A stretch of DNA of 63,367 nt, filler included, from Octopus bimaculoides (taxonomy: Eukaryota): NCBI RefSeq assembly GCF_001194135.2. It is 5 parts of 5 records of this genome, joined end to end, with 100 filler letters (N's around TTAATTAATTAA, not from the genome) between each part and the next. Parts side by side here need not be neighbours in the genome. Positions count along the whole stretch, not along the records: positions 26,571 to 40,961 come from NC_068987.1; 4 more parts are not named here. One strand, written 5' to 3'. A model generated the notes under the pieces. That model was not told the DNA's origin and made no database searches. It worked only from the letters and a program-made list of their open reading frames with translations. The position numbers and the translations under genes were made by a program. This document shows, piece by piece, positions 26,471-40,774 of the stretch. The stretch's first letter is position 1; each line of letters opens with the position of its first letter.

Positions 26471-26687
26471 NNNNNNNNNNNNNNNNNNNNNNNNNNNNNN
26501 NNNNNNNNNNNNNNTTAATTAATTAANNNNNNNNNNNNNNNNNNNNNNNNNNNNNNNNNNNNNNNNNNNNCTTTAGAAAGAACTTTTCCCCCACCACCTC
26601 CTCTTCCGGTCTTTTCATAATGTAACCTCGTGGGCATCGGTACCATTTTCCTCTTTCTCCGTTCTTCCATTCTCCGAACTTTCCATC

Positions 26688-26720
26688 TTTCCGACGAAGG
26701 GCTACGCCCGAAACGTCATG
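26688..26720 (+). ncRNA. Degenerate minimal hammerhead-like motif
   Basis: CCGACGA-A-GGGC-TAC-GCCC-GAAAC-GTC (U4 changed to C; stem I poor). Confidence 0.5.
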
Positions 26721-27360
26721 CACTCTCTCTTTCCTTTCCTGAGCGTCCAATAATACTATCCATATCACGTCCTCACTTTGTTGTTTTTTTGTTTTTTGTT
26801 ATTGTTTTTTGAACTACATACATACATACATACATGCATGCATGTATGTATGTATGTATGTATGTATGTATATATCTATCTATCTATCTATCTATCTATC
26901 TACAGAGAGAAATTATGTATAAACAACAAAGAAAAAAGCCACAGTAATTAATAACAGCTCGTTAATACAATTAATAACAGGTCGTTGCATTGCAGTAAGT
27001 CCAAGTGGGACAAACTTGTATGTATATGCATAATAGATTAAAATAAGCCTCAAGAACGACAGCAGAAAAGCACAGATATCACATATACTTCATATTCTAA
27101 TTATGATTAACAGCTGTTTTGTTAAGATAAACATCACCAAATGTATAATTACATAATTACATTACACAATTGAATTAAATTAAATGAAATTAAGAACTGT
27201 ATTTACCCAAATCATCAGCAATGTTGTTTTATGTAAAACAGAAAACAGTTAATAAGAAATTATGAATTACTAGTTCCAGTTCTTTGGGGGATACTGGATT
27301 TGTTATGTATATAAAGAGATTGGCTACTTATTTTTCTGGGATTGGTCAAGTGATGTAGAC

Positions 27361-27403
27361 ACCTCTGATGAGAATCTAGCAAGGTTCGAAAATCGATTAA
27401 AGT
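27361..27403 (+). ncRNA. Minimal hammerhead ribozyme candidate with intact core
   Basis: ACCT-CTGATGA-GAATC-TAGCAA-GGTTC-GAA-AATCGATT-A-AAGT; palindromic helix III, UUA triplet. Confidence 0.65.
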
Positions 27404-29486
27404 TGATCATTGTTTTCATGCGACGGAGAAATAGTTAAATTTGCTATGCTTGTATGTTTACTATGTGGGTTTAAATAACTTCAACAGAAATTTTTAATTT
27501 CATAGGTGACGTCTGACATCAGAAATGGATATGTTTCATTCGTATTAAACTTCATTAAAAAGCATGGTGTCTTCAAAGTTGATTGATCTGTGATTTTTAC
27601 CCCCAAGCAAAAAAAAAAAAAAAGACAGTTTTAGCTAGCAGAATTTAGTGTACTTACAAAATTATTAAAATAAATAGTCAAAGAGGGCCAATGAATTTAA
27701 ATAATTACGGAAGGTGAAGATCAACTTAATGACTTAATGACCTGAAATGAGTTTATTCTATATCATTTATATTTTGGTATATAAACTCGTTTACTCCTGT
27801 CAATGTAAAGTTGAAGGAAGAGAGCCAATTGAAAAGACCCCAGCAGAAGCAACGTCTGCGGTGTTAACTGTTAAAAATCTATATCTTTTTGTATCTTTAT
27901 TTTCTACTTACTTCAGTCTCTGGACTGCAGCCATGCTGGAGCACTGTTTTGAAGGTTTTCTGTCAAACGGCTCGAGCCTAGTACTTATTTTTCTTTAAGT
28001 CTAGTACCTATAATATCGGTCTTTTTTTTCTGAAACGTTAAGTTACGGAGAAGGGGGAAATCATAAATACAATGACATACACGCACATTTATATATACGA
28101 CGGCTTCCACGTAGTTTCCGTTTACAAAATCTACTCACAAGGTATTAGTTGGCCCAGCGATACAGTAGAAGACACTTGCTCAAGGTGCCGCATAGTGGAA
28201 CTGAACCTGAAACTACGTAGTTGCAAAACGAGCTTCCTAACCACCCAGCCACGCCTGCGCCAATAACAACCAATTCTCTCTCAAATACCACCTTTCTGAC
28301 TTAAATGAAGATGCACATTGGACAATATAATTCCAGCTATACTATGCCCAGTAACTATGATTGAAAATGTTTTTGATTGCAGATTTGCTAGATTTGAGTT
28401 ACCTTAGGACTAAGTAACAAGTAATACTTAGTTTATATACCGTGGTGGTACAAAGAGTAAAATCGAATCAAATACGATCTGATCATGAGGGACACATCCC
28501 CTTAAACGACAGGCACTTTTTCGACCTCTCCGCTAACCTCTGGTAATTACACATGACGACTCTTGGTTCATGTTTTTAAGATCCAGCACATGAACGCTCA
28601 GAGACGTTCCAGCCATGACCATCCAGAATTGTTTTTATTATATGTAAAACTTACTTAGTGCGTCGTTCCTTTTTCTAAGTTTATTTAGGACATATTTAAT
28701 TGGCATTTCAAGAAAGCAAACTATGATTAGACTTGGATTCTTGGGGAGAGAAAGCAACTTTTTAATTCGTGCGCTACAAATGATCACGATAACTGGGATA
28801 ATAAAAATCTGCAAGATATTCTTAAGATTTAAAGTTGATGAACAAAATAAGATGCTTTCTTTCACAACCCTGCTACTAAATAGGTAGCCGATCAAAATTA
28901 AATCTATGTTAAATAAGAGAAAAATAATATAAGCATGAACATACATCATGCCCGCTTTCTCGTTTCTCGTACAGCCATCGCTTAAAACATTTCAGAATGG
29001 GCCTCATGTGTGAGCATTACGATGCTAGAATGCCAAGTGATGCCTATGCATGATGCTTTTTAAAGAGAGGAGAGGCCTTGTACACAACCAATCCCACTTT
29101 CTGAACAAACGTGTTTTATGCACCAAAGTCATCAGTTTGTCAATGATTGCTGCAGGAACTACCGCTGTCCATGAGAAATAGCAGGACCAAGCTTGTGTGT
29201 ACAGTATTGGATGGCTGTTGACTTTATCCGTTTTGTTTTTCATCCTCCAAGGTGTTCAATCACCCTCCTCACTAAGTAAGATTAGTGGGGTTATCAGTTT
29301 AGTCGCCGGCGACCCGAGCATGCAGCAAGTTGCAATGGATTACATGTTACCAGTGGCGCTCACAAGTTACCTGTTATTCATAGATAGATAGATACATTTC
29401 TTTTATTAGCCACACAGGGCTCAACGAAGATGGGACAAATACAATATAGATAGATAGATACATACATACATACATACATACATACA

Positions 29487-30254
<768 letters not shown>

Positions 30255-32884
30255 AACACATACAAACACATGCATGTATGTGTATGCATGTATGCGTGCA
30301 AGTATTTATGCATGTGTGTGTGTTTTACTTGAAAAAGAATGACTGTAAGGTCGAGACACCGGCGAAAATGAATATTTTCTATAATGTTATTCAAATACAT
30401 TAATAACGACCATCCCTCGCGTCCACTGAGTGGTACGAATTCAGTTCCCTCTTCTTTAAAAAATTTCACATTCAGTCTGTAGATGGAAAAAAAGGAAAAG
30501 AATGTTAATGATATTTGTCATTCATCCAACCTTTATGGTTACCCTTCAAACTTAAGTTCTTCGTAGAATTAGCACCAGTCACTTACAAAATTACGAAACT
30601 CTTTTGCAAGAGTCAAACCTGTTCCAAGATTTTGCATATATGACGCTATATGTGTAGATATACTTGCACTTGTTTAATGAGTTTGCATGTTCCTTTATTA
30701 CACACTCACACAATGTGTGTGTGTGTGTGTACGTTTGTGTGTCAACGTACGCATGTATAAATTACTCTTTATGCACGAACGTGTATGCTATTATGTACAT
30801 AATATGGTTGTGCAAATACATTCATTCCCGGAAACTGAAATGGACAGTCTTATAAAGTTTTACAAGTCTTTACTATAACACAAATAGATTAGATTTGGTG
30901 GAATAGAATCAGTTTGCTTTGTTCTTTGTTGGAACATTCTAGCATTTCGAGGCTTTTATGTAAATCTATTATAGCGTAGCCCACTACATCTATGATAAGA
31001 GTTACAAATGAAAGCATATAGCCACGATACGAAAACTACACATTCTTCATTAATTCACTATCGGTGTCCACTTTTTACAAAACTGTAGACAAAATATTCA
31101 CGTCCTCTGGACAGTGGACTTCTACAATAGTACATGATGTTTTTACTAAGTATTATAGAACGATCTTAAATCTGTGTGTTTGTATTGGATTGTTATTTTT
31201 ATTGTAATATTCTCCCAGTATTCCATATTTTTAAAGATGCTTTTAAAGATACAGTTTGGTTCTGGTGAATAGCACCCGTGCCATGTCTCATGGGAAGGTA
31301 ATACTTTGCGGATTATCTTCTTATGTGGACGATTTTAAGTAGTCGCTGGTGATGTGCATGTCACCATCAAGATTGCTGTGCTATATTCAACATTTTCTTT
31401 CACAATGTCGTTGTTCGGAGCTATGCTTGATTAGATATTTATTAGCTATATCCCGTTCCTGAAGAGCGAAAGAATATCCAGCTTGGTGGAATGTGATATG
31501 TCTATCACCTGTCCAGGAGACACTGTTCCTCTTCTCAATCTTATTCGTATACTCTTCCTTACATGTTACGCAAGCGTAGCTTTTTGTTTATATGGCTGTT
31601 TTACTTTGCAGTTTCTATTTAAGCCGAATTTGTACCCCAGGTACACTTGGGGTACAAGAAACAATTATACACTCTGGGCACATATTTAAGATATCTTTAC
31701 CTGTTATGAAGATGTGACTTTCATATACATGTCATTATTCAGTTTATTTCAATATTTCTTGCCAACAGAGAAAGAACCAGTTTCTAACCCAGATCCAAGG
31801 TTCCGTCATTGGAATTTCAACATCAACAACAGAGTATGTATGTATGTATGTATGTATGTATGTATGTATGTATGTATGCATGTATGTATGTGCAGATTTG
31901 TATGTTTTATATATGTGTTCTCATGCATATAGTTACATATCTAGACATGCTTATATATATTTAAATGATAAACTTCTGGAAAGTTTTACAGATTTTTTAC
32001 AGTTCCAGTGATGAATTGGATCTGTAACCTTCGAATTAGCTTCCTCCGTTCTGATTTTGAGAAGCCTGATTTCTCAAGATTGGTATTTAGGCAGTGTGTT
32101 ACATATCCCAGGACCTCAATAATTACAGGTATAAACCTGAACTTGTAATCTGGATAGAGTTACTGTATGTACGTATGTACATATGTATGTATGTACGTAT
32201 ATATATATATATGTATATAGGGATGGGTGGATGGGTGGATGATTGTGTGCGCGCGCGCGCGTATGGATGTATGTATATGTGAGTCGTGGCTGGCTGGTCC
32301 CATGAATGGAGGATGAACTGATGGTTAGTTGTATGGATGAATACACACATATATATATATATATATATAGAAACATAAACACACACACACATACATATAT
32401 ACATATGCACAGAGAGAGAATGAGAGGGAAAGAGAGAGAGAGAATGAGAGGGAAAGAGAGAGAGAATGAGAGGGAAAGAGAGAGAGGGAATGAGAGGGAG
32501 AGAGAGAGAAACAGAAACGGATGGACAGGCAAACGGATACACTGACTGACGTATATCGAAAATGAATAAAAGTAAAATTACTTAAGTTGGTATGCCCTCC
32601 TTAGAAACAGTTTATCTGTGTACGTATATTCACCTCAAACACCTACGTGGGTGTGATACGATGGTTTGTTTTGCCAACAAGCTCGCCCCAACAATCTGCT
32701 ACGTCAGAGGTACTTATGATCGTGGGGTAATAAAAGGAAGTGTTGATATGGTTTCGGCAGGCACACAGACAAGCAGATGGGAATCAGATGCTATCTTGTC
32801 TCTATACCGGAAGTAAGCTGTACGTCTGTAAGCCTGCCAGTCTGCACGTCTGGTTATATGGTCATGTGGTTATGTAGAAATACG

Positions 32885-32886
<2 letters not shown>

Positions 32887-32957
<71 letters not shown>
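32887..32957 (+). repeat. (GA)n microsatellite
   Basis: Direct reading. Confidence 0.95.
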
Positions 32958-32961
<4 letters not shown>

Positions 32962-34907
32962 CGTAAGTGAGTGAGTGAGTTAGTGCGTGTATGTGTGTGT
33001 ATATGTATATATAGTTGTGTATCTATTTCTTTGTGTTAGTGTGTGAATGTGGATGTGGATGTAAATGTGCATGTGAGTATGCGTGTGTGTATCTGTGTGG
33101 TTATGTAACTGTTTGTGTATGTAATTGTTTTTCTGTGTAATACGTATGTGATTGAGCGTTGAGTGCGTAGATGTATGCATATATGGGTATGTGTTTTGAG
33201 ATGTGTGTGATGGTCTCTGGGGATGTGTGTGTGTATGTGTGTGTATGAGTGCAAGCGTTTGAATGATCATGAGAATATACGTGTATGTGCTTCTATGTGT
33301 GTAAGTCTGCGTTTGGATGTACGGTTCTTCTTCATATGTGTGAGAGAGAGAGAGGGGGGAGAGAAAGAGAGTGAGAGAGAGAGAGTGTTTGTGTGTATTA
33401 AGTATGTGTATATGATCATATTTGTGAATGTAAGTGGTTGTGTGAATGCTTACATGTGTAAAGTATATTTCCGTGTGCATAGCTGTAAGTCCAATGTGTT
33501 TATCGGTCCGTCACTCTTCCCTTGTGTTTATCGCCCTGTTTCTCTCCCTCTGTATGTCGATGCCTCTCTCGCAATATATTATTAAATTGAATTCAGTTCT
33601 ACCTTACAAGACCTTACGATGATTCTGGCCTTTTCGCTGTCAGATAGTTATCTTTTTATTTTTTTTTAATTGAATAATTTCTTTAAAATAAATTTAAAAT
33701 GTTTAAAAGTTAGACTCATATGTATATTGTATATATTTTCATTGAAATAATTAATGTACTATAGGAGGAAGGAGGTGAGAGAGTTAGCCAACTGGGGGAG
33801 GGAACTAAACACTTACATCGATCTCAGTGTTTTCGTAAGGATAAAAGGTTTAGTCCACCTCGCCGGAATTTGAACTCAGAAAAGCTAATGCCGCTAAGCA
33901 TTTTGTCTAGCGTGCTAATGTTTCTTCTAGCTCGTCGGCTTATAATGTGAATAAAATAAAGCTATGCATTTAGCGAAGAAATAAGTCTGATGACCAAGCA
34001 TCTGGCCCCAATTAACTACAATTAGCGGAAAACACTAGAAATAATACAAAGACTCAATCTTCGAAGATGCAATAGTATTAACATGAGTAGACACCTATGT
34101 GACTGAGCTAACCTAATCTTATAGTAATTCTGCTTGTTTCTTCGTTACTTAGCCCGTCCGCTTCCATGTGATTAGCTGAAGGGGATGGGGATGGGGATGA
34201 GGATGGGGAGGGAGGGGAGGAAAGAGATGGGGAGGTGGAGAGATAGGGAGGGAGAGGTGGCTGTGAGTGAAATGTGTAATTTTTTAACTAAATTTTCTCT
34301 CTCCGTTACTAAACCCGCCTGTAACGCTTTCACGTGATTAGTTGAAGGGAAAGGCGAAGATGGAGAGAGAAAGAGGGAGAGTGCTGTGTATTAAGTCTAT
34401 AAAATTGTGCATAAATATATAAAGTGTATATGTCAAGTGCATTAAGTAATCATCGTATTCCAATTTCCTTCACTTTTCAATGATTAGCAGATGAGCGACT
34501 ATCTTTTGATACAGACACAACAAAAGCTACGCTTTCAGGTCTTTTGGATAAAGTTTTCAGAAATAACCCAATAAGTTTACCATTAATTCCGTAAAATATT
34601 CATGGGGTCCCGCTGGTGATTTTCCTTGTTTCAGTCATTCTATTCCAGCTTTATATTTAGACTATATCATCCTATGTCTTTCTCTGTTTAAAACAGTAGG
34701 ATGTAATCTGAAGGAGTTCTGACTGCTATTTTTAGTAAGTTGATCCAACTATTTAAAACCGCCCTATTTTAAAGAATCGAATGTTGGCTGGTTTGGAATA
34801 TCTCATTTGTTGGCTCGCCCTACAATATAGAACTTTTGTGACTTTGTCAGGAAGGGAGATAATTTTATGAAACATTTCATTGCTATCTTCTTTCTGTCTC
34901 CATCCAG

Positions 34908-35229
34908 GATGCTGACGTCATTGTCGGTTCATTGTCAGTGACAACAGAGCGGGACGCAGTCGTTGACTTCACCTTACCTTACTACGACTTCGCTGGTATC
35001 CAGATACTGGTTAAGAAGAAAGCTCAAGAAACGAAATTATTTTACTTTCTCGACGTCTTTCATCTGGATGTATGGCTATGCCTGGTGGCCGTTCTTATTA
35101 CTACTAGTATCCTGCTTTATATGTTTGACCGATTCAGTCCTTTCACCAACGTTGACCAGAATGGTGATCAAAGGGTTTTTGATATGAAGGAAAGTATGTG
35201 GTTCGTGATAGGGTCCTTGACACAGTCAG
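34908..35229 (+). CDS. iGluR-family (IR25a/IR8a-like) exon: S1 C-terminal half, M1, pore loop
   Basis: Pyrimidine tract plus CAG acceptor (34907), phase 0; DADVIVGSLSVTTERDAVVDFTLPYYDFAG...ESMWFVIGSLTQS; donor G|GTGAGT, phase 1. Confidence 0.93.
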
Positions 35230-36260
35230 GTGAGTAAAACAGTGAAACTTAGTTTCTTTAGATCGCCATTGCTTTTGAGACATTGATATGAGTCAGTGTG
35301 ATATTCTCCAACCAAAATAGTTCTGCAGCTGTTATTTACGTCCCTTTTTTTACTCCCAAACTCACAGTATCTTTCTATCTTTTACTTTTAACATGTTTCG
35401 GTTATTGGACAGCGGTCATGCTGGAGCACCGCCTTGAAGGGCTTAGTCAAAAAAATCTTAACTTATTCGTCAAACCTGGTACTTATTCTATCGGTGTCTT
35501 TTGCTGGTCTGCCAAGTTAAGAAGGCGTAAACAAACAAACAAATAAACACCGGTTGTCAAGTGGTGGGAGGGGAGAATACACACAAACACACACACACAC
35601 ACACACACACGACGGTTTTCTTTCAGTTTCCGTCTACCAAACCACTTACTAGGCTTTAGTCGGCCAGAGGCTATAATAGAAGATACTTGCCCAAGGTTCC
35701 ACGCAGTGGGACTAAACCTAGAATCATGTGGTTGGGAAGAACAAATCTCTTACTTTCCAGAGCTGTGAGATGCACGAGGACATCCTTTTATCTTCTAGAA
35801 GATACTCTCACTCTTATTCTATAGGAACATTTTCTGTAACAATATGCAGGTTTCCAATGAACAACTTCGATTATTGTTTATATTATCCTTTATAATCTAG
35901 TTTCATCCTCAGTCGCCATCAACTTCTCTACGCCGTCCTCTCCTATTCAACTTTATCTCCAGTTACCTTACATTCTACAACTTTGTATTCAATTATTCTA
36001 AGGTATCTATATCGTTCTCCATTCCGCGATTTTGTCTCCGGTTGTCTTCAACTGTATTAAACTGTCTTCCACACTCCAGTTGGATTCTCAGTTGTCTTCA
36101 GCTATTCTGTGTCACTATCTCACCTCACTGTCCAAGTTTGCTGCAAGTTGTTCCCCACTGTACCCCATTGCTCAACGTTGCTTTGAATCATCTCAATATT
36201 ATCCTTTTCGTCTGTCAAGAAAATACTAATACGTTCATATCTATTGTTTGTTGATCACAG

Positions 36261-36828
36261 GTGGAGGTGACCCGCCGTCTTCGTTCTCTTCAAGAGTCCT
36301 CGTAGCAGGTTTTTGGTTCTTTTGCATCATAATGATGTCAACCTTCACGGCTAATTTGGCCGCCTTCCTCACAGCACGTCGTTACACAAGTGACCTAAGC
36401 TCACTCGACGATCTCGCAGCTCAGACAGAAATCAACTTCTCAGTAATGGCCAACAGCTCTACAATGCGCTACTTTGAACGCATGGCTAAAATTGAGAACC
36501 TCTTTGACACAAAATGGAAGAAAATGAATTTCAAGCACGGTTCCGCTGGAGATTTTGAAGGAAATTTAGCAGTTTGGAATTATCCAGTTAGCGAGAAAAA
36601 TGCTAACATCTGGAAACGCATTCAGGCCAACGGTATGGTGGCAAATTCCTCAGAAGGACTGCAAAGAGTAAGAGACGGTAATTTTGCGTACATCACTGAA
36701 TCTCCAATTGTTGAGTATTATACAAAGAAATACAACGACCTCACAAGCATCGGTAACCCATTCAGCTCAAGACCTTATGCTTTTGCTTTCAAGCAGAACT
36801 CGGAACTTGTAGATCAATTTTCAAAACA
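36261..36828 (+). CDS. iGluR-family (IR25a/IR8a-like) exon: M3 gate and S2
   Basis: CACAG acceptor, phase 1 matches the previous exon; GGDPP...STFTANLAAFLT...YFERMAKIE...LAVWNYPVSEK...RPYAFAF; donor CA|GTAAGA, phase 2. Confidence 0.95.
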
Positions 36829-36886
36829 GTAAGAATTGGGTTGATTTTGCTATTTTAATTTTTCTCACTCAATTTATCTATCAACT

Positions 36887-36887
<1 letters not shown>

Positions 36888-36942
<55 letters not shown>

Positions 36943-37008
36943 TATTTCTTTCTTTCTTTCTTTCTTCTTCTTCTTCTTCTTCTTCTTCTTCTTCTTCTTC
37001 TTCTTCTT
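36888..37008 (+). repeat. (TTTC)n/(TTC)n pyrimidine microsatellite
   Basis: Direct reading; ~60 nt after the exon donor. Confidence 0.9.
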
Positions 37009-37037
37009 CATCACTCACTCACTCTCAGTAGATATGT

Positions 37038-37071
<34 letters not shown>

Positions 37072-37733
37072 ATGCACGCCTGTATATGTGTGCATGTGTG
37101 TTTATTAGCATAGGTGTATGTATGTATGTATATACACACGCACACACACACACACACATAAATATTTCTTTATTTGTGCTACCAATGGCTTCATGTGGGC
37201 AAAATACGCAGTTTCCAAATGTTCCACTTAAAAATGTTAGGCATCCTTCTGCGCGAGATTCTACATTATACATAAAACTATTGAAGACTCTCCATTAACT
37301 GATATCATCGAAGCAGATATTATCCAAGAAGTAAGATTTTCTAGTAGTCTATAATCTTAAAACAACAAACAAAAGGTATAATAGCCATGTAGCTAGAAAA
37401 CTGAAATTTTGGGATCAATACAGATATTGCACATAGAAGTACGTTTGGTTATTCTTTGATCGCTCATGTTGTATTTACTCTCATCTGTATTGCCGATAGC
37501 ACATTTACTGTCTTCTTTGCTTCTGTAGCCACACTATAGATATCAAACGATATGCCATTTAATACAAGTATACATATAGGCAGGTTAAATTGCATTCCTG
37601 TATTCACAAATTCTTGTAAATGTCTTGTTGACTTAAATAGAATATGTCTTTTCACTTTGTTAGTAAAGGGCTTGAATTCAGAAAAGAACTGATATTTCAA
37701 AGAACGTCATTCATACCTTGCTCTTGTTTTTAG

Positions 37734-37935
37734 TATTCTTCAGCTGCAGCAGAAATCTGTTCTAGAAGACCTGAAGAGGAAGTGGTGGCCTAAATCGACT
37801 GAGGAAACAAAGGTGAAAGACTCTGAAGGTCTCAGCGTGGAGAGTTTATCTGGAACATTCATAGTACTTGGCATTGGACTGGCATGTAGCCTGTTGTTTC
37901 TGGCTTTAGAAGTAGTATGGGATAAATACAAGAAG
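37734..37935 (+). CDS. iGluR-family exon: S2 end and M4
   Basis: TTTTTAG acceptor, phase 2 matches; (H)ILQLQQKSVLEDLKRKWW...EGLSVESLSGTFIVLGIGLACSLLFLALEVVWDKYKK; donor AAG|GTAAGC. Confidence 0.93.
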
Positions 37936-38018
37936 GTAAGCGATACTCTACGAATAAAGACCTCAATAGGTGGCGAAATGTCATCGAACAAGCGATTCAG
38001 AGACAAATCATCGACTAA

Positions 38019-38308
38019 CTCCTCCTTCTTCTCTCCTTCCTCTCTCCTTCCTCTTCCTCTCCCTCCTCCTTCTCCCCCTTCTCCTTCTCCCCTTCTCCTT
38101 CTCCCCTTCTCCTTCTCTCCTCCTTCTTCTCCCCTCCTCCTTCTCCCCTCCTCCTTCTCCCCCTCCTTCTCCCCTCCTCCTTCTCCCCTCCTCCTTCTCC
38201 CTTCCTCCTTCTCCCCTCCTCCTTCTCCCCCTCTTTCTCCCCTCCTCCTTCTCCCCTCCCCTTCTCCTCCTTCGCCTCCTCCTACCCTTCTCCGCCTCCT
38301 CCTCTTTT
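38019..38308 (+). repeat. ~290-bp polypyrimidine tract with 14-bp TTCTCCCCTCCTCC units
   Basis: Only three purines seen in the interval. Confidence 0.9.
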
Positions 38309-38331
38309 ATACTCACATCTATACTCTACGT

Positions 38332-38576
38332 TAGTGGTTCTCAACTATTTTCTGCTTATGGAGCTCCAATTTTACTCTATTGGACCCCCCCCCCATGTTA
38401 AAAATAAAATCCTGTTATATTTTGATAATGAAATGTTATTAGGAATTGTATAAAAAATTGTTTAAAATATTTTGCGTATTGTAGAAGATACTTCTACAAT
38501 ATATTGCTGATAAATCTTAATAACAAACTCTTATGTGGACACCAAAGGTTATGTGGATCCCGTTTGCAAACCACTG
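38332..38576. mobile_element. hAT-type MITE
   Basis: Imperfect TIRs TAGTGGTTCTCAAC / GTTTGCAAACCACTG; flanks CTCTACGT / CTTTACAT. Confidence 0.7.
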
Positions 38577-38929
38577 CTTTACATTATATCTATACTGGCA
38601 TTTCAAAGAACTTTATATTCTGAAGCTAACATACAAGCTTTATCCTGATACCGAGTTCTTTTCACAAAAGGGCCAACGACGGAGCCTCTACATACATTAA
38701 ATTATTCATTATTTAATATACATCTCATACTGCAGAACATTCCCTTTATTAGTGCTCCACAAGTGATCACAACAATTTTGGCACTTTACAATAGTATCAC
38801 CCCATCCAGCTGTCTCGAGCAGCTTTGATGTTGTCAAGAAATGCTCAGATTGTTTTAACCCACATCGGAGCTCACCTTTTATTTCCTGTCATCTATGAAG
38901 TTACCTTGCTAGACAATGCAACGCAAAGA

Positions 38930-39229
38930 CCCCCTTACGTCATGAATGACCATGGAATTGCACATAGACAGTTACCATCCGAGGTACAAGTCCGGGCAAG
39001 ATTGTTTATGGAAGACCAGCAGTTACCCGTGCATATCAGCCAGCCCTCTCCACGCCACCCATGTTGGCGGCAGTGACGTTACAACTCATTTCTACAGCTG
39101 AGTGAACTGGTGTAACGTGAAATAAAGTGTCTTGCTCAAGAGCACAACACGCAGCCCGGACCGGGAATCACATTCACTACCTCATGATCGTTAGCCCAAC
39201 GCTCTAACTACTGAGCCATGCGCCTTCAC
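38930..39229 (-). mobile_element. tRNA-headed SINE: head B with a different 3' tail
   Basis: GTGAAGGCGCATGGCTCAGTAGTTAG...CTTGAGCAAGACACTTTATTTCA shared with 15664; 3' part unrelated; left boundary approximate. Confidence 0.7.
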
Positions 39230-39849
39230 CAAACAATATTTATATGATTTAGATACACTGACATACATCATGCCCTCATAGATTACGTGCTTGTATTACA
39301 CTCATGTATTACATACTTATTTTCTCGGGCCACAACAGCTGTTAGAAATATAAACGTATTGCCATTGTGCTTTCTGCTTACAAGATAAGAACTTGACAGC
39401 AGCGTAGATTTGGAACGATAGATCAATTAGTACCAACCATTTGATATTAGATCTTGCCAAGTGTTAGACAATAACACCAATATCAACAACTGTGTGGTAG
39501 CTGTTATCTTTTGCTTGTTTCAGTCATTGGACTACAGCCATGCTAGGGTATCGCCTTATTTTGTTTTTTAAAGCTTGGAATTTAGTCTGTCATTGTCTTC
39601 TGTTTGAACCGCTAGGTTATGAGGATGTAAAAAGACCAACAGCAGTTATCAAACGGTGTGGGGGACACACACAACGATACATACACACACAAATACAATA
39701 CACACACAAATACAATACACACACATGCACACGCAAACAAAATACACATACAAACACAAACATAACCACACACACACACACACACACACACACACNNNNN
39801 NNNNNNNNNNNNNNNNNNNNNNNNNNNNNNNNNNNNNNNNNNNNNNNNN

Positions 39850-39901
<52 letters not shown>

Positions 39902-40480
39902 GCACACATACACACACACACACACATAAATGCGCTCACAAGATTTTGTCCGGCCCGGGGCTATACTAGCAGATACTAAGATACCATGCAGTGAGACTCC
40001 TGCGCCTACGTGTAATATATCGCACGTTTTAGCATAACAATCTGGGTCTGACTCTCTCGCAAGGATAACTAAAAAATTATATGCTGCTTTCTATTGCAAC
40101 AATTTACGAATGGAAGATAATGACTCTAGGCATGGCTGTGTGGTGAGAAGTTTACCTCTCAACTTTGGTTCCCAGCTTCATGGTTCTGGGATCAATCGCA
40201 CTACGTGGCATCTTGGGCGAGTGTTTTCTCGGTCCTATCAAAGCTAAAAAGACACCGATAGCGTAAGTACCAGGTTTAAAGAAGAAAAAAAAAAGGTATT
40301 GGGGTCCATTCGTTCGACAGAAGTTTTTAATGCGGTGCCCAAGTATGGCTGCAGTCTAAATGATTGAAACAAATAGAGGATAAAAGACAGAATATATCAC
40401 CAGGCACCAAACACAGCAACCCTGTAAAAATCATGGACATTGCAGTTCCTTTCTCTTCTATACTTCCACTTCTGTTTCAG

Positions 40481-40531
40481 CAATACCAAAACCGAAATAA
40501 CAATATCATTAACGATAGCACCAGCGACCAT
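40481..40531 (+). CDS. Candidate 51-nt cytoplasmic-tail exon of the IR-like gene
   Basis: Strong pyrimidine tract plus TTTCAG; QYQNRNNNIINDSTSDH; phase 0/0; weak donor CAT|GTATAT. Confidence 0.4.
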
Positions 40532-40624
40532 GTATATTTACTAATACTGTCTTACCGTAATTTAAAACGTGTTTTACTTAAGAATTCTTTCTGATTCTCT
40601 CTGTCTTTATTTATTATTTTCCAG

Positions 40625-40774
40625 TTAGGAAATCCAGCCCTTGGACCAACCACTCACAATGTTTCTGTCATATATGATCGTCCCAGTTACCAACAGAAAG
40701 AATCCAGTAGTTTTTCCAACGGATCAATGTTTACATACGCTAACCCAGCTTTCACTGATTCGGGGTTCAAATGA
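40625..40774 (+). CDS. Candidate terminal coding exon of the IR-like gene
   Basis: Long pyrimidine tract plus CCAG, phase 0; LGNPALGPTTHNVSVIYDRPSYQQKESSSFSNGSMFTYANPAFTDSGFK*; AATAAA 73 nt downstream. Confidence 0.6.
   Translation, partial: LGNPALGPTTHNVSVIYDRPSYQQKESSSFSNGSMFTYANPAFTDSGFK

What the first reader, a model, noticed from the sequence alone, without database searches (positions are those of the whole stretch)
34908..37935. IR co-receptor-clade receptor with mixed IR8a and IR25a signatures
Seen: three phase-compatible exons encode S1-M1-P-M3-S2-M4. Established (recalled): the co-receptor extra loop (CREL) ending in WxYPxxE/D is specific to IR25a/IR8a. Here YFERMAKIE and LAVWNYPVSEK and PYYD resemble IR25a. 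In contrast TFTANLAAF (F for Y), QTEINFSV, ILQLQ and EGLSVESL resemble IR8a. All three acid-ligand contacts are retained (R in TTERD, T in NSSTM, E in ITESP). IR8a is usually regarded as arthropod-restricted. Inference: a divergent cephalopod paralogue of the co-receptor clade, or an IR8a-like lineage outside arthropods, possibly acting in arm or sucker chemosensation.
Basis: partly seen in the sequence, partly recalled or inferred. Interest (0 to 1): 0.75.

Follow-up and report, generated by a model that had tools for sequence, protein, structure and literature searches.

The report
Octopus IR25-type co-receptor gene, 3' exons
These exons are the last part of an already annotated Octopus bimaculoides gene for a chemosensory ion-channel co-receptor ("ionotropic receptor 25a"), which on closer analysis belongs to the published IR25b side-branch of snails and other lophotrochozoans, not to true IR25a or IR8a.

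Summary
The three exons have exactly the stated boundaries and splice into 364 residues with no stop. They are 100% identical to residues 486-849 of RefSeq XP_052825715.1, "ionotropic receptor 25a" of Octopus bimaculoides (898 aa). A fourth, terminal coding exon at 40625-40774 was missed.

The protein carries the co-receptor extra loop, the Arg/Thr/Glu ligand triad, and an ATD-LBD-channel architecture.

The "mixed signature" is real. At 33 columns where IR25a and IR8a differ, octopus has 15 IR25a residues, 7 IR8a residues and 11 neither. That pattern is shared by a whole lophotrochozoan lineage published as "IR25b".

- **Placement:** my trees put the octopus gene next to gastropod IR25b.1.
- **Rejected:** it is not sister to true lophotrochozoan IR25a (ΔlnL 159) or to IR8a (ΔlnL 74).
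- **Unresolved:** the order of the three lineages (ΔlnL 5.5 or less), so an IR8a-IR25b sister relationship is neither shown nor excluded.
- **Untested:** whether Octopus also has a true IR25a could not be checked with these tools.

Verdict: a known gene in a known subfamily with an imprecise database name. Interest is low to moderate.

The parts
34908..35229 (+). Coding exon 10 of 13 (aa 486-592, plus the first base of Gly593). It encodes the second half of S1 with agonist-contact Arg500 (34950-34952), M1 (35064-35135) and the pore helix (35184-35219).
   Evidence: AG|GAT...CAG|gtgagt splice sites. 100% tblastn match to P0309 aa 486-593. Feature mapping. AF2 helices 538-561 and 578-589.
36261..36828 (+). 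Coding exon 11 (aa 593-781, plus two bases of His782). It encodes the pore-loop tip TQSGGGDPP, M3 (36284-36388) with TFTANLAAF (36341-36367), and the start of S2 with Thr660 (36461-36463). It also holds the co-receptor extra loop (about 36497-36613, LAVWNYPVSEK inside) and Glu739 (36698-36700).
   Evidence: cacag|GT...ACA|gtaaga splice sites. tblastn match. Alignment with iGluRs, IR25a and IR8a. Coordinates. The same exon boundaries and phases occur in a 66%-identical relative, L001/P0013.
37734..37935 (+). Coding exon 12 (last base of His782, then aa 783-849). It encodes the end of S2 (ILQLQQ..KRKWW) and M4 (from 37837).
   Evidence: tttag|T...AAG|gtaagc splice sites. tblastn match. AF2 helix 817-851.
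40625..40774 (+). Terminal coding exon 13 (aa 850-898, cytoplasmic tail LGNPALGP...TDSGFK) with stop TGA at 40772-40774.
   Evidence: Acceptor ttttccag|TTAGGA. The reading frame matches the C-terminus of XP_052825715.1.
35230..36260 (+). Intron 10 (1031 nt). It holds one copy of a dispersed SINE-like repeat (about 35300-35560) and a (CA)n run.
36829..37733 (+). Intron 11 (905 nt), with (TTTC)n, (CTT)n and (GT)n microsatellites.
37936..40624 (+). Intron 12 (2689 nt). It holds CT-rich low-complexity sequence, a third copy of the SINE-like repeat, and an assembly gap of N at 39796-39849 inside a (CA)n run.
26571..34907 (+). The 3' part of intron 9 (the intron is about 14.6 kb in the chromosome). 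It holds no coding exon of this gene, only repeats and a mariner-like fragment.
   Evidence: Exon 9 (aa 426-485) maps at L004 73303-73482, which is upstream of the piece. The piece corresponds to L004 79732-94122. tblastn with homologues found nothing here.

Best explanation
Window 34908-40774 (+ strand) holds the last four coding exons (10-13 of 13) of the Octopus bimaculoides gene annotated in RefSeq as 'ionotropic receptor 25a' (XP_052825715.1, 898 aa; chromosome CM046607.1). These exons encode residues 486-898: the second half of S1, M1, the pore loop, M3, S2 with the co-receptor extra loop, M4 and the cytoplasmic tail. The whole protein has the three-layer iGluR build of ATD, ligand-binding clamshell and channel.

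By descent it is neither the orthologue of arthropod and nematode IR25a nor an IR8a. It belongs to a third co-receptor lineage of lophotrochozoans, published for molluscs as 'IR25b'. Its nearest relatives are the gastropod IR25b.1 genes. The blend of IR25a-like, IR8a-like and iGluR-like residues is a property of that whole lineage.

Inferred mechanism (not shown here): it acts as a broadly expressed co-receptor subunit that assembles, probably as a pair, with ligand-specific 'tuning' IRs. The result would be heterotetrameric cation channels in peripheral chemosensory neurons, with the extra loop serving export and trafficking as in Drosophila IR8a.

Two octopus features could alter detail: there is no N-glycosylation motif in the loop, and Ser stands where iGluRs, IR25a and IR8a have the pore Gln (Q/R site). 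Retention of Arg/Thr/Glu leaves open that it binds an amino-acid-like ligand itself.
For: Identity:
- The spliced product equals residues 486-849 of P0309 (XP_052825715.1) at 100% identity.
- The piece maps exactly onto L004 79732-94122 of CM046607.1, and the terminal exon is confirmed.
- The O. sinensis and O. vulgaris orthologues are 96% identical.

Architecture:
- Pfam finds Lig_chan, Lig_chan-Glu_bd and SBP_bac_3.
- The AF2 model has pLDDT 72 and aligns to full-length GluA2, GluK2 and GluD2 over about 870 columns, E=3e-45.
- The extra loop is present, which is the co-receptor hallmark defined in PMC6472016.

Lineage (ML-distance NJ, 101 sequences, 367 columns):
- Co-receptor clade 100%, true IR25a 99%, IR8a 100%.
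- The true IR25a clade includes lophotrochozoans: Elysia, Tubulanus and P0068.
- The lophotrochozoan IR25b-like clade has 85%, and Octopus plus gastropod C1 has 71%.

Fixed-topology ML:
- Octopus moved to lophotrochozoan true IR25a: ΔlnL 159 (sd 21).
- Octopus moved to IR8a: 74 (sd 17).
- Octopus moved outside the whole IR25b clade: 21 (sd 9.5).

Link to published names: clade C1 contains the published BarIR25b.1 (P0300, 100% identical). C2 contains BarIR25b.2.

Similarity:
- Identity to C1 is 50%, to true IR25a 39% and to IR8a 37%. Lophotrochozoan true IR25a is 62% identical to arthropod IR25a.
- The octopus ATD scores 53-59 bits on an IR25b.1 profile, 34-37 bits on IR25a and 9-14 bits on IR8a.
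- The diagnostic columns give 15/7/11 for octopus and the same pattern for Patella, Pomacea, Mytilus and Owenia. True lophotrochozoan IR25a gives 28-29/0-1.

Function by analogy: the co-receptor role and the loop's role in ER export are from PMC6472016. Expression of IR25 in Sepia olfactory organs, suckers and fins is as summarised in PMC12837371 and PMC11682238.
Against: - My phylogeny is home-made: a Gonnet-derived rate matrix with four gamma categories, NJ subtrees held fixed, 38 taxa, and no site-heterogeneous model. A fast-evolving true IR25a could be pulled away from its orthologues by long-branch effects.
- Octopus has more IR25a-type than IR8a-type residues, and its loop (LAVW.YPVSEK) reads like IR25a.
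- If cephalopods have only this one IR25-type gene, calling it 'the IR25' is functionally reasonable.
- I could not read Andouche et al. 2021, so I do not know whether they placed the cephalopod gene in IR25a or IR25b.
- No expression, assembly or channel data for this gene were available. The mechanism rests wholly on analogy with Drosophila IR8a and IR25a.
- Pfam does not recognise the N-terminal 410 residues as an ANF_receptor domain. The ATD call rests on the predicted fold.
Confidence: 0.85

Rival explanations
1. It is simply the ordinary cephalopod orthologue of IR25a, as the RefSeq name says, and has evolved fast. Its grouping with gastropod IR25b would then be a long-branch artefact.
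For: - RefSeq names it IR25a or IR25a-like in three Octopus species.
- It has twice as many IR25a-type as IR8a-type diagnostic residues.
- The extra-loop motif LAVW.YPVSEK matches tick IR25a.
- No second octopus IR25-type protein appeared in the profile search.
Against: - ΔlnL is 159 (7 sd) against this placement.
- Identity to true IR25a is 39%, whereas true IR25a is 62% identical between phyla.
- It lacks the invariant TPQGGGEAP pore motif and the S/TYTANLAAF motif of all true IR25a.
- Its ATD fits IR25b.1 better.
- It shares 16 residues with IR25b.1 at columns where IR25a and IR8a both conserve something else.
- Gastropods and a nemertean carry both gene types, so the two lineages are distinct.
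Confidence: 0.07
2. The lophotrochozoan IR25b lineage, including this octopus gene, is the counterpart (orthologue) of arthropod IR8a. In that case the IR25a/IR8a pair would date back to the protostome ancestor.
For: - The NJ tree joins IR8a and the IR25b clade, though with only 17% bootstrap.
- The ML topology (IR8a,IR25b) is only 4.7 lnL units (0.9 sd) worse than the best, with RELL 0.16.
- Seven IR8a-type residues are present, including F in TFTANLAAF and S in ESL.
- A Biomphalaria member of this kind was once named 'IR8a' (PMC4890853).
Against: - The best topology is (IR25a,IR8a) with IR25b outside, RELL 0.78.
- Octopus alone as sister of IR8a is rejected, ΔlnL 74.
- The F of TFTANLAAF occurs only in Octopus plus gastropod IR25b.1. 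The other IR25b-like sequences have Y, so it is convergent.
- The IR8a loop signature YRVWDYPIKEQY is absent.
- IR8a and ecdysozoan IR25a share D at the acidic ligand position and a short insertion before FAFI. IR25b and iGluRs lack both.
Confidence: 0.12
3. It is a conventional synaptic glutamate receptor of the AMPA/kainate/delta group. An earlier RefSeq model called it 'glutamate receptor ionotropic, delta-2-like'.
For: - The best solved-structure matches are GluD2, GluD1 and GluK.
- The Arg/Thr/Glu triad is intact, with Glu as in iGluRs.
Against: - It has the roughly 30-residue extra loop that iGluRs lack.
- It groups with IR25a, IR8a and IR25b at 100% bootstrap, apart from 15 iGluR outgroups.
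- Identity to iGluRs is 34%, against 50% to IR25b.1.
- The pore Gln is lost.
Confidence: 0.02

Closest known systems
Gastropod IR25b.1 (e.g. Babylonia areolata BarIR25b.1 = XP_076458839.1; Pomacea XP_025098257.1; Patella, Lottia and Haliotis 'IR25a-like' proteins)
   Same: - About 50% identity over S1b to M4.
- Same clade in NJ and ML trees.
- MSTFTANLAAF in M3.
- Gln lost at the pore Q/R site.
- Glu at the acidic ligand position.
- A divergent ATD that Pfam barely detects, or does not detect.
- The extra loop is present.

   Different: - Octopus keeps Thr at the S2 ligand position, where IR25b.1 has Val.
- The loop reads VSEK rather than LGDK and has no NxS/T motif.
- No tandem IR25b.2 neighbour lies within 10 kb, whereas gastropods have 25b.1 and 25b.2 on one chromosome.
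- The octopus gene is spread over 84 kb.
True IR25a (Drosophila, crustacean and nematode IR25a; mollusc IR25a such as CchIR25a and Elysia marginata GFR79731.1)
   Same: - ATD-LBD-TMD architecture.
- The extra loop with the A-V-W-x-Y-P core.
- Arg in S1.
- A presumed co-receptor role.

   Different: - Only 39% identity.
- Lacks the TPQGGGEAP pore motif and the YTANLAAF motif.
- Has E, not D, at the acidic ligand position.
- The ATD is not recognisably IR25a-type.
- Placement in this clade is rejected (ΔlnL 159).

Arthropod IR8a
   Same: - Co-receptor architecture and the extra loop.
- TFTANLAAF with F.
- An I-N-F/Y-S/T-V strand after M3.
- E-G-x-x-x-E-S-L before M4.

   Different: - 37% identity.
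- The IR8a loop signature (LTLNxT...YRVWDYPIKEQY) is absent.
- The pore Gln is absent.
- Placement as sister of IR8a is rejected (ΔlnL 74).

Vertebrate GluD2, GluK2 and GluA2 (solved structures, e.g. 9nwq, 8fwq, 7rz4)
   Same: - Overall fold and domain order.
- M1-P-M3-M4 topology.
- Arg/Thr/Glu agonist contacts.

   Different: - They have no extra loop.
- They have a pore Gln.
- They are synaptic receptors.
- About 34% identity.

Membership tests
IR co-receptor clade (IR25a/IR8a type) | iGluR core S1-M1-P-M3-S2-M4 | tested here: met
   Pfam Lig_chan 1.5e-36 and Lig_chan-Glu_bd. AF2 helices lie at M1, P, M3 and M4.
IR co-receptor clade (IR25a/IR8a type) | Full-size amino-terminal domain, which tuning IRs lack | tested here: met
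   There are 410 residues before S1. The AF2 model aligns to full-length GluA2, GluK2 and GluD2 over about 870 of 898 columns. However, Pfam ANF_receptor is not detected at E<=0.01. The ATD exons lie outside the window piece.
IR co-receptor clade (IR25a/IR8a type) | Co-receptor extra loop of about 30-35 residues near the start of S2, absent from iGluRs and tuning IRs (PMC6472016) | tested here: met
   aa 672-710 (window 36497-36613) align with the loop of IR25a and IR8a and with a gap in 15 iGluRs.
IR co-receptor clade (IR25a/IR8a type) | Single N-glycosylation motif inside the loop, stated in PMC6472016 to be conserved in all IR8a and IR25a | tested here: not met
   There is no NxS/T in the octopus loop in any of the three Octopus species. 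It is also missing in 28 of 86 co-receptor-clade sequences in my set, so it is not universal outside insects.
IR co-receptor clade (IR25a/IR8a type) | Broad expression in sensory neurons and a requirement for trafficking and function of tuning IRs | not testable with these tools
   Only second-hand literature is available on Sepia IR25 expression.
True IR25a orthologue group | Groups with arthropod and nematode IR25a in phylogeny | tested here: not met
   0 of 100 NJ bootstraps. ΔlnL is 159 when forced next to lophotrochozoan IR25a.
True IR25a orthologue group | Very high conservation across phyla, with signature motifs TPQGGGEAP (pore) and S/TYTANLAAF | tested here: not met
   Identity is 39%, against 62% between lophotrochozoan and arthropod IR25a. 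Octopus has TQSGGGDPP and TFTANLAAF.
IR8a | Groups with arthropod IR8a, with loop signature LTLNxT...YRVWDYPIKEQY | tested here: not met
   0 of 100 bootstraps. ΔlnL is 74. The loop reads KMNFKH...LAVWNYPVSEKN.
IR25b (mollusc lineage of PMC12837371 / Andouche 2021) | Groups with published IR25b sequences rather than with IR25a | tested here: met
   Octopus plus clade C1 has 71% bootstrap. C1 contains BarIR25b.1 (P0300, 100% identical to the supplementary sequence). Moving Octopus outside the whole clade costs ΔlnL 21, sd 9.5.
IR25b (mollusc lineage of PMC12837371 / Andouche 2021) | ATD of the IR25b type | tested here: inconclusive
   The best score is on the IR25b.1 ATD profile (53-59 bits, against 34-37 for IR25a). 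Identity is only about 19%, and a profile built from the other IR25b-like ATDs gave no hit.
IR25b (mollusc lineage of PMC12837371 / Andouche 2021) | Tandem pair IR25b.1/IR25b.2 on one chromosome, as reported for gastropods | tested here: inconclusive
   No second gene lies within 10 kb either side of the 84-kb octopus gene. Larger distances could not be inspected.

The most novel reading that the evidence does not exclude
The IR25b lineage is not mollusc-specific. It would be a third, ancient co-receptor lineage, as old as the IR25a/IR8a split and possibly the lophotrochozoan orthologue of IR8a. Octopus, where only this IR25-type gene has turned up, may have lost true IR25a and run its IR system on this lineage alone.
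Probability: 0.15. Interest if true: 0.6.

Novelty: already known. Interest (0 to 1): 0.3.

Why it matters
IR25a is regarded as the ancestral protostome chemosensory co-receptor. Cephalopod chemosensation, by suckers and olfactory organ, is an active field. The octopus gene labelled IR25a actually sits in the IR25b lineage, with an altered pore and a loop that lacks the glycosylation site. This matters for anyone who transfers Drosophila IR25a biology to cephalopods or uses database names to count co-receptors.

My trees also suggest that 'IR25b' extends to annelids and nemerteans and is not a recent offshoot of IR25a. If that holds up, it changes the picture of how the co-receptor pair evolved. 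As a genome finding, though, it is an annotated gene in a described subfamily.

Tried and rejected
1. **tblastn with distant homologues.** I searched the piece for further exons and found none. This missed the unconserved terminal exon, which the RefSeq protein later revealed.
2. **First word-indexed protein search.** The spliced protein did not retrieve its own RefSeq entry. Only the profile search did. For a while I therefore wrongly suspected an unannotated genome.
3. **Organism identification via the mariner-like ORF at 29590-29994.** It returned only unnamed metagenome hits and termite or frog mariners, so one search was wasted.
4. **Exact look-up of the exon-11 ORF.** It is not on record.
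5. **Reading Andouche et al. 2021.** The paper is not held, so its placement of the cephalopod gene is known only through citing papers.
6. **Looking for a true IR25a in Octopus.** Look-ups of P0068 and P0080, which are lophotrochozoan-type true IR25a of unknown species, gave a Logan transcript and nothing respectively.
7. **Supplementary sequences of PMC12837371.** They are cut at 400 residues, so only N-terminal comparisons were possible.
8. **Pseudogene and chance ORF.** Both are rejected: the frame is intact, 96% conserved among Octopus species, and matches the RefSeq model.
9. **tRNA-derived origin of the intronic repeat.** ARAGORN found no tRNA-like sequence.
Full report
**What is in the sequence.** They are 34908-35229, 36261-36828 and 37734-37935, each bounded by AG and GT. 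They join in frame to 1092 nt, giving 364 aa with no stop. All quoted peptide motifs are present.

The product has Pfam Lig_chan (E=1.5e-36) and the tail of the glutamate-binding domain. It matches solved GluD2, GluD1, GluK and GluA chains at E down to 2.9e-54. tblastn with distant homologues found no further exon in the piece. That turned out to be a false negative for the unconserved C-terminal exon.

**Identity of the gene.** A profile search returned P0309, RefSeq XP_052825715.1 'ionotropic receptor 25a [Octopus bimaculoides]', 898 aa. It is 100% identical over the whole query, and the spliced peptide is residues 486-849 of it.

Its 90% cluster holds O. sinensis XP_036360612.1 and O. vulgaris CAI9725624.1, which are 96% identical. 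It also holds the older partial models XP_014768463.1 and XP_014768464.1; the latter was named 'delta-2-like'. XP_014768464.1 is listed in Table S1 of PMC12837371, which reuses the mollusc iGluR collection of Andouche et al. 2021. The gene has therefore already been through published phylogenies.

The gene spans 84 kb on CM046607.1, and tblastn resolves 13 coding segments. The window piece is L004 79732-94122 and contains the last four. The ATD and the first half of S1 lie upstream of the piece.

**Architecture and functional residues.** An AF2 model has mean pLDDT 72, with the LBD at 90 or above. It shows an alternating beta/alpha N-terminal domain, the clamshell, and helices at M1 (538-561), the pore helix (578-589), M3 (601-635) and M4 (817-851). 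Foldseek aligns it to full-length GluA2, GluK2 and GluD2 over about 870 columns, E=3e-45. An ATD is therefore present, even though Pfam ANF_receptor does not detect it.

Between the start of S2 and helix 705-716 there is a segment of about 30-39 residues that 15 iGluRs lack and that all IR25a and IR8a sequences have. This is the co-receptor extra loop defined by Abuin et al. 2019 (PMC6472016).

Two departures stand out:
- The loop has no NxS/T motif. That paper found the motif conserved in all IR8a and IR25a. In my wider set, 28 of 86 sequences lack it.
- The pore reads TQSGGGDPP, with Ser where iGluRs (MQQG), IR25a and IR8a (TPQGGGEAP) have the Q/R-site Gln.

**Which lineage?** No tree-building program was available, so I built my own tools. 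I derived an amino-acid rate matrix from the Gonnet matrix. I computed ML distances with four gamma categories and ran NJ with 100 bootstraps on 101 sequences and 367 columns. I then optimised branch lengths by ML on fixed alternative topologies for 38 taxa.

The NJ tree gave four clades:
- The co-receptor clade has 100% support.
- 'True IR25a' has 99%. It contains arthropods, nematodes and also lophotrochozoans: Elysia marginata P0044, the nemertean Tubulanus P0317, and P0068 and P0080.
- IR8a has 100%.
- A lophotrochozoan clade has 85%. It contains Octopus, two gastropod groups (C1 and C2), bivalves, the annelid Owenia and a second Tubulanus gene.

Octopus joins gastropod C1 with 71% support. 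The supplementary sequences of PMC12837371 tie these groups to published names:
- BarIR25b.1 is P0300, at 100% identity, and falls in C1.
- BarIR25b.2 is P0028 and falls in C2.
- The ATD of CchIR25a matches P0044, P0068 and arthropod IR25a instead.

That paper, citing Andouche 2021, describes IR25a plus a 'mollusk-specific' IR25b in every gastropod.

The ML tests of alternative placements were:

| Alternative placement | ΔlnL | sd |
|---|---|---|
| Octopus beside lophotrochozoan true IR25a | 159 | 21 |
| Octopus beside IR8a | 74 | 17 |
| Octopus outside the whole IR25b-like clade | 21 | 9.5 |
| Whole IR25b-like clade sister to lophotrochozoan IR25a (a recent duplication) | 60 | 16 |
| Annelid and nemertean members moved to true IR25a | 142 | 22 |

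Two further lines support the placement. The octopus ATD scores best on an IR25b.1 profile: 53-59 bits, against 34-37 for IR25a and 9-14 for IR8a. Identity over S1b to M4 is 50% to C1, 43% to the other IR25b-like sequences, 39% to true IR25a, 37% to IR8a and 34% to iGluRs. Lophotrochozoan and arthropod true IR25a are 62% identical to each other.

**The 'mixed signature'.** I took the 33 columns where true IR25a and IR8a each have a consensus of at least 80% and the two differ:

| Sequence | IR25a residue | IR8a residue | Neither |
|---|---|---|---|
| Octopus | 15 | 7 | 11 |
| Patella IR25b.1 | 15 | 7 | 11 |
| Pomacea IR25b.1 | 15 | 6 | 12 |
| Mytilus | 17 | 5 | 11 |
| Owenia | 17 | 4 | 12 |
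| P0068 (lophotrochozoan true IR25a) | 29 | 0 | 1 |
| Tubulanus P0317 (true IR25a) | 28 | 1 | 2 |

Several 'IR8a-like' states, such as V after I-N-F/Y-S, are also the iGluR state. So is the Glu at the acidic ligand position, where IR25a and IR8a both have Asp. These look ancestral. The F of TFTANLAAF is shared only by Octopus and gastropod IR25b.1, while the rest of the lineage has Y. It therefore supports the Octopus-C1 grouping and is convergent with IR8a.

An earlier paper had already called a Biomphalaria gene of this kind 'IR8a' on 31% identity (PMC4890853). The confusion is not new.

**What remains open.** The order of the three lineages is not resolved. ((IR25a,IR8a),IR25b) is best at lnL -19520.05. 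(IR8a,IR25b) is 4.7 worse and (IR25a,IR25b) is 5.5 worse, each about 1 sd. The RELL weights are 0.78, 0.16 and 0.05. IR8a as sister of arthropod IR25a costs 46, sd 13.

These numbers come from a simple model with fixed subtrees and should be treated as indicative. I could not test whether Octopus also carries a true IR25a. No tool searches eukaryote genomes, and the capped protein searches retrieved no second octopus co-receptor. Those searches also missed known gastropod true IR25a, so absence there means little. Citing papers say Sepia has three IRs and one IR25.

**Mechanism.** The shown facts are the gene, its exon structure, its domain build, the loop, the ligand triad, the altered pore and its lineage. 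The rest is inferred from Drosophila IR8a and IR25a (PMC6472016). On that analogy, it serves as a co-receptor that pairs with tuning IRs in heterotetrameric cation channels of peripheral sensory neurons, with the loop needed for export from the ER.

The intact Arg/Thr/Glu triad leaves open that it binds an amino-acid-like ligand itself. Gastropod IR25b.1 has Val in place of the Thr. The Ser at the Q/R position may change conductance or Ca2+ permeability.

**Verdict.** This is a real and correctly delimited feature that was already annotated. It belongs to an already described subfamily, and its RefSeq name is phylogenetically loose. I rate novelty 'already known' and interest 0.3.

Noticed in passing
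window 40625-40774: This is the terminal coding exon of the same gene (aa 850-898 plus TGA).
   Followed up: yes
window 27800-28120, 35285-35605, 39410-39730 (+ strand, all intronic): Three copies of a dispersed repeat of about 200-250 nt lie in the same orientation (core ...TTGGACTGCAGCCATGCTGGAGCACCGCCTTGAAGG...). They are 65-73% alike, and each is followed by an A/C-rich or (CA)n tail. The element is SINE-like, but ARAGORN finds no tRNA-like head.
   Followed up: partly
window 29487-30158: Inverted arms of 218 nt, 87% complementary (29487-29704 and 29941-30158), flank a 236-nt core. A minus-strand ORF (29590-29994) spanning the core and parts of both arms encodes a Mos1/mariner HTH_48 domain. 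Its best hits are about 78% identical unnamed metagenome and termite mariners. This is a decayed or rearranged mariner-type element in intron 9.
   Followed up: partly
window 39796-39849: A run of 54 N (an assembly gap) lies inside a long (CA)n microsatellite in intron 12. Other microsatellites are (CA)n at 30158-30250, (TTTC)n/(CTT)n at 36885-37010 and (GT)n at 37040-37070. A CT-rich tract at 38000-38330 produces long spurious ORFs.
   Followed up: no
related proteins P0033 (Owenia), P0034 and P0317 (Tubulanus): The nemertean Tubulanus has both a true IR25a (P0317) and an IR25b-like gene (P0034), and the annelid Owenia has an IR25b-like gene. The lineage published as 'mollusk-specific IR25b' therefore seems to be lophotrochozoan-wide. 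Moving these two sequences to true IR25a costs ΔlnL 142.
   Followed up: partly
window 35220-36277 (pore-loop tip); alignment: The whole IR25b-like lineage has lost the Gln at the iGluR Q/R site. That Gln is invariant in iGluRs, IR25a and IR8a (TPQGGGEAP or MQQG). Octopus and Owenia have Q-S-G, while gastropods have M-S-G or L-A-G.
   Followed up: partly
alignment, S2 before ...FAFI (octopus aa about 731-735; window about 36674-36690): Ecdysozoan IR25a and IR8a share a 2-7 residue insertion here. It is absent from lophotrochozoan true IR25a, from most of the IR25b lineage and from iGluRs. It may be a rare-change marker that ties IR8a to ecdysozoan IR25a.
   Followed up: no
database names: RefSeq's automatic names are unreliable in this family. 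Many lepidopteran and mosquito IR8a proteins, and a Panulirus ornatus protein that groups with krill inside IR8a, are labelled 'ionotropic receptor 25a'. Gastropod IR25b genes are labelled 'IR25a-like' or 'kainate 4-like'.
   Followed up: partly
L001/L002 (Logan runs ERR12370324 and ERR12370320), protein P0013: An unlabelled sequencing run holds a 66%-identical copy of exon 11 with the same acceptor and donor positions and phases. It also lacks a glycosylation motif in the loop. It is probably another cephalopod's orthologue, but the species is unknown.
   Followed up: partly
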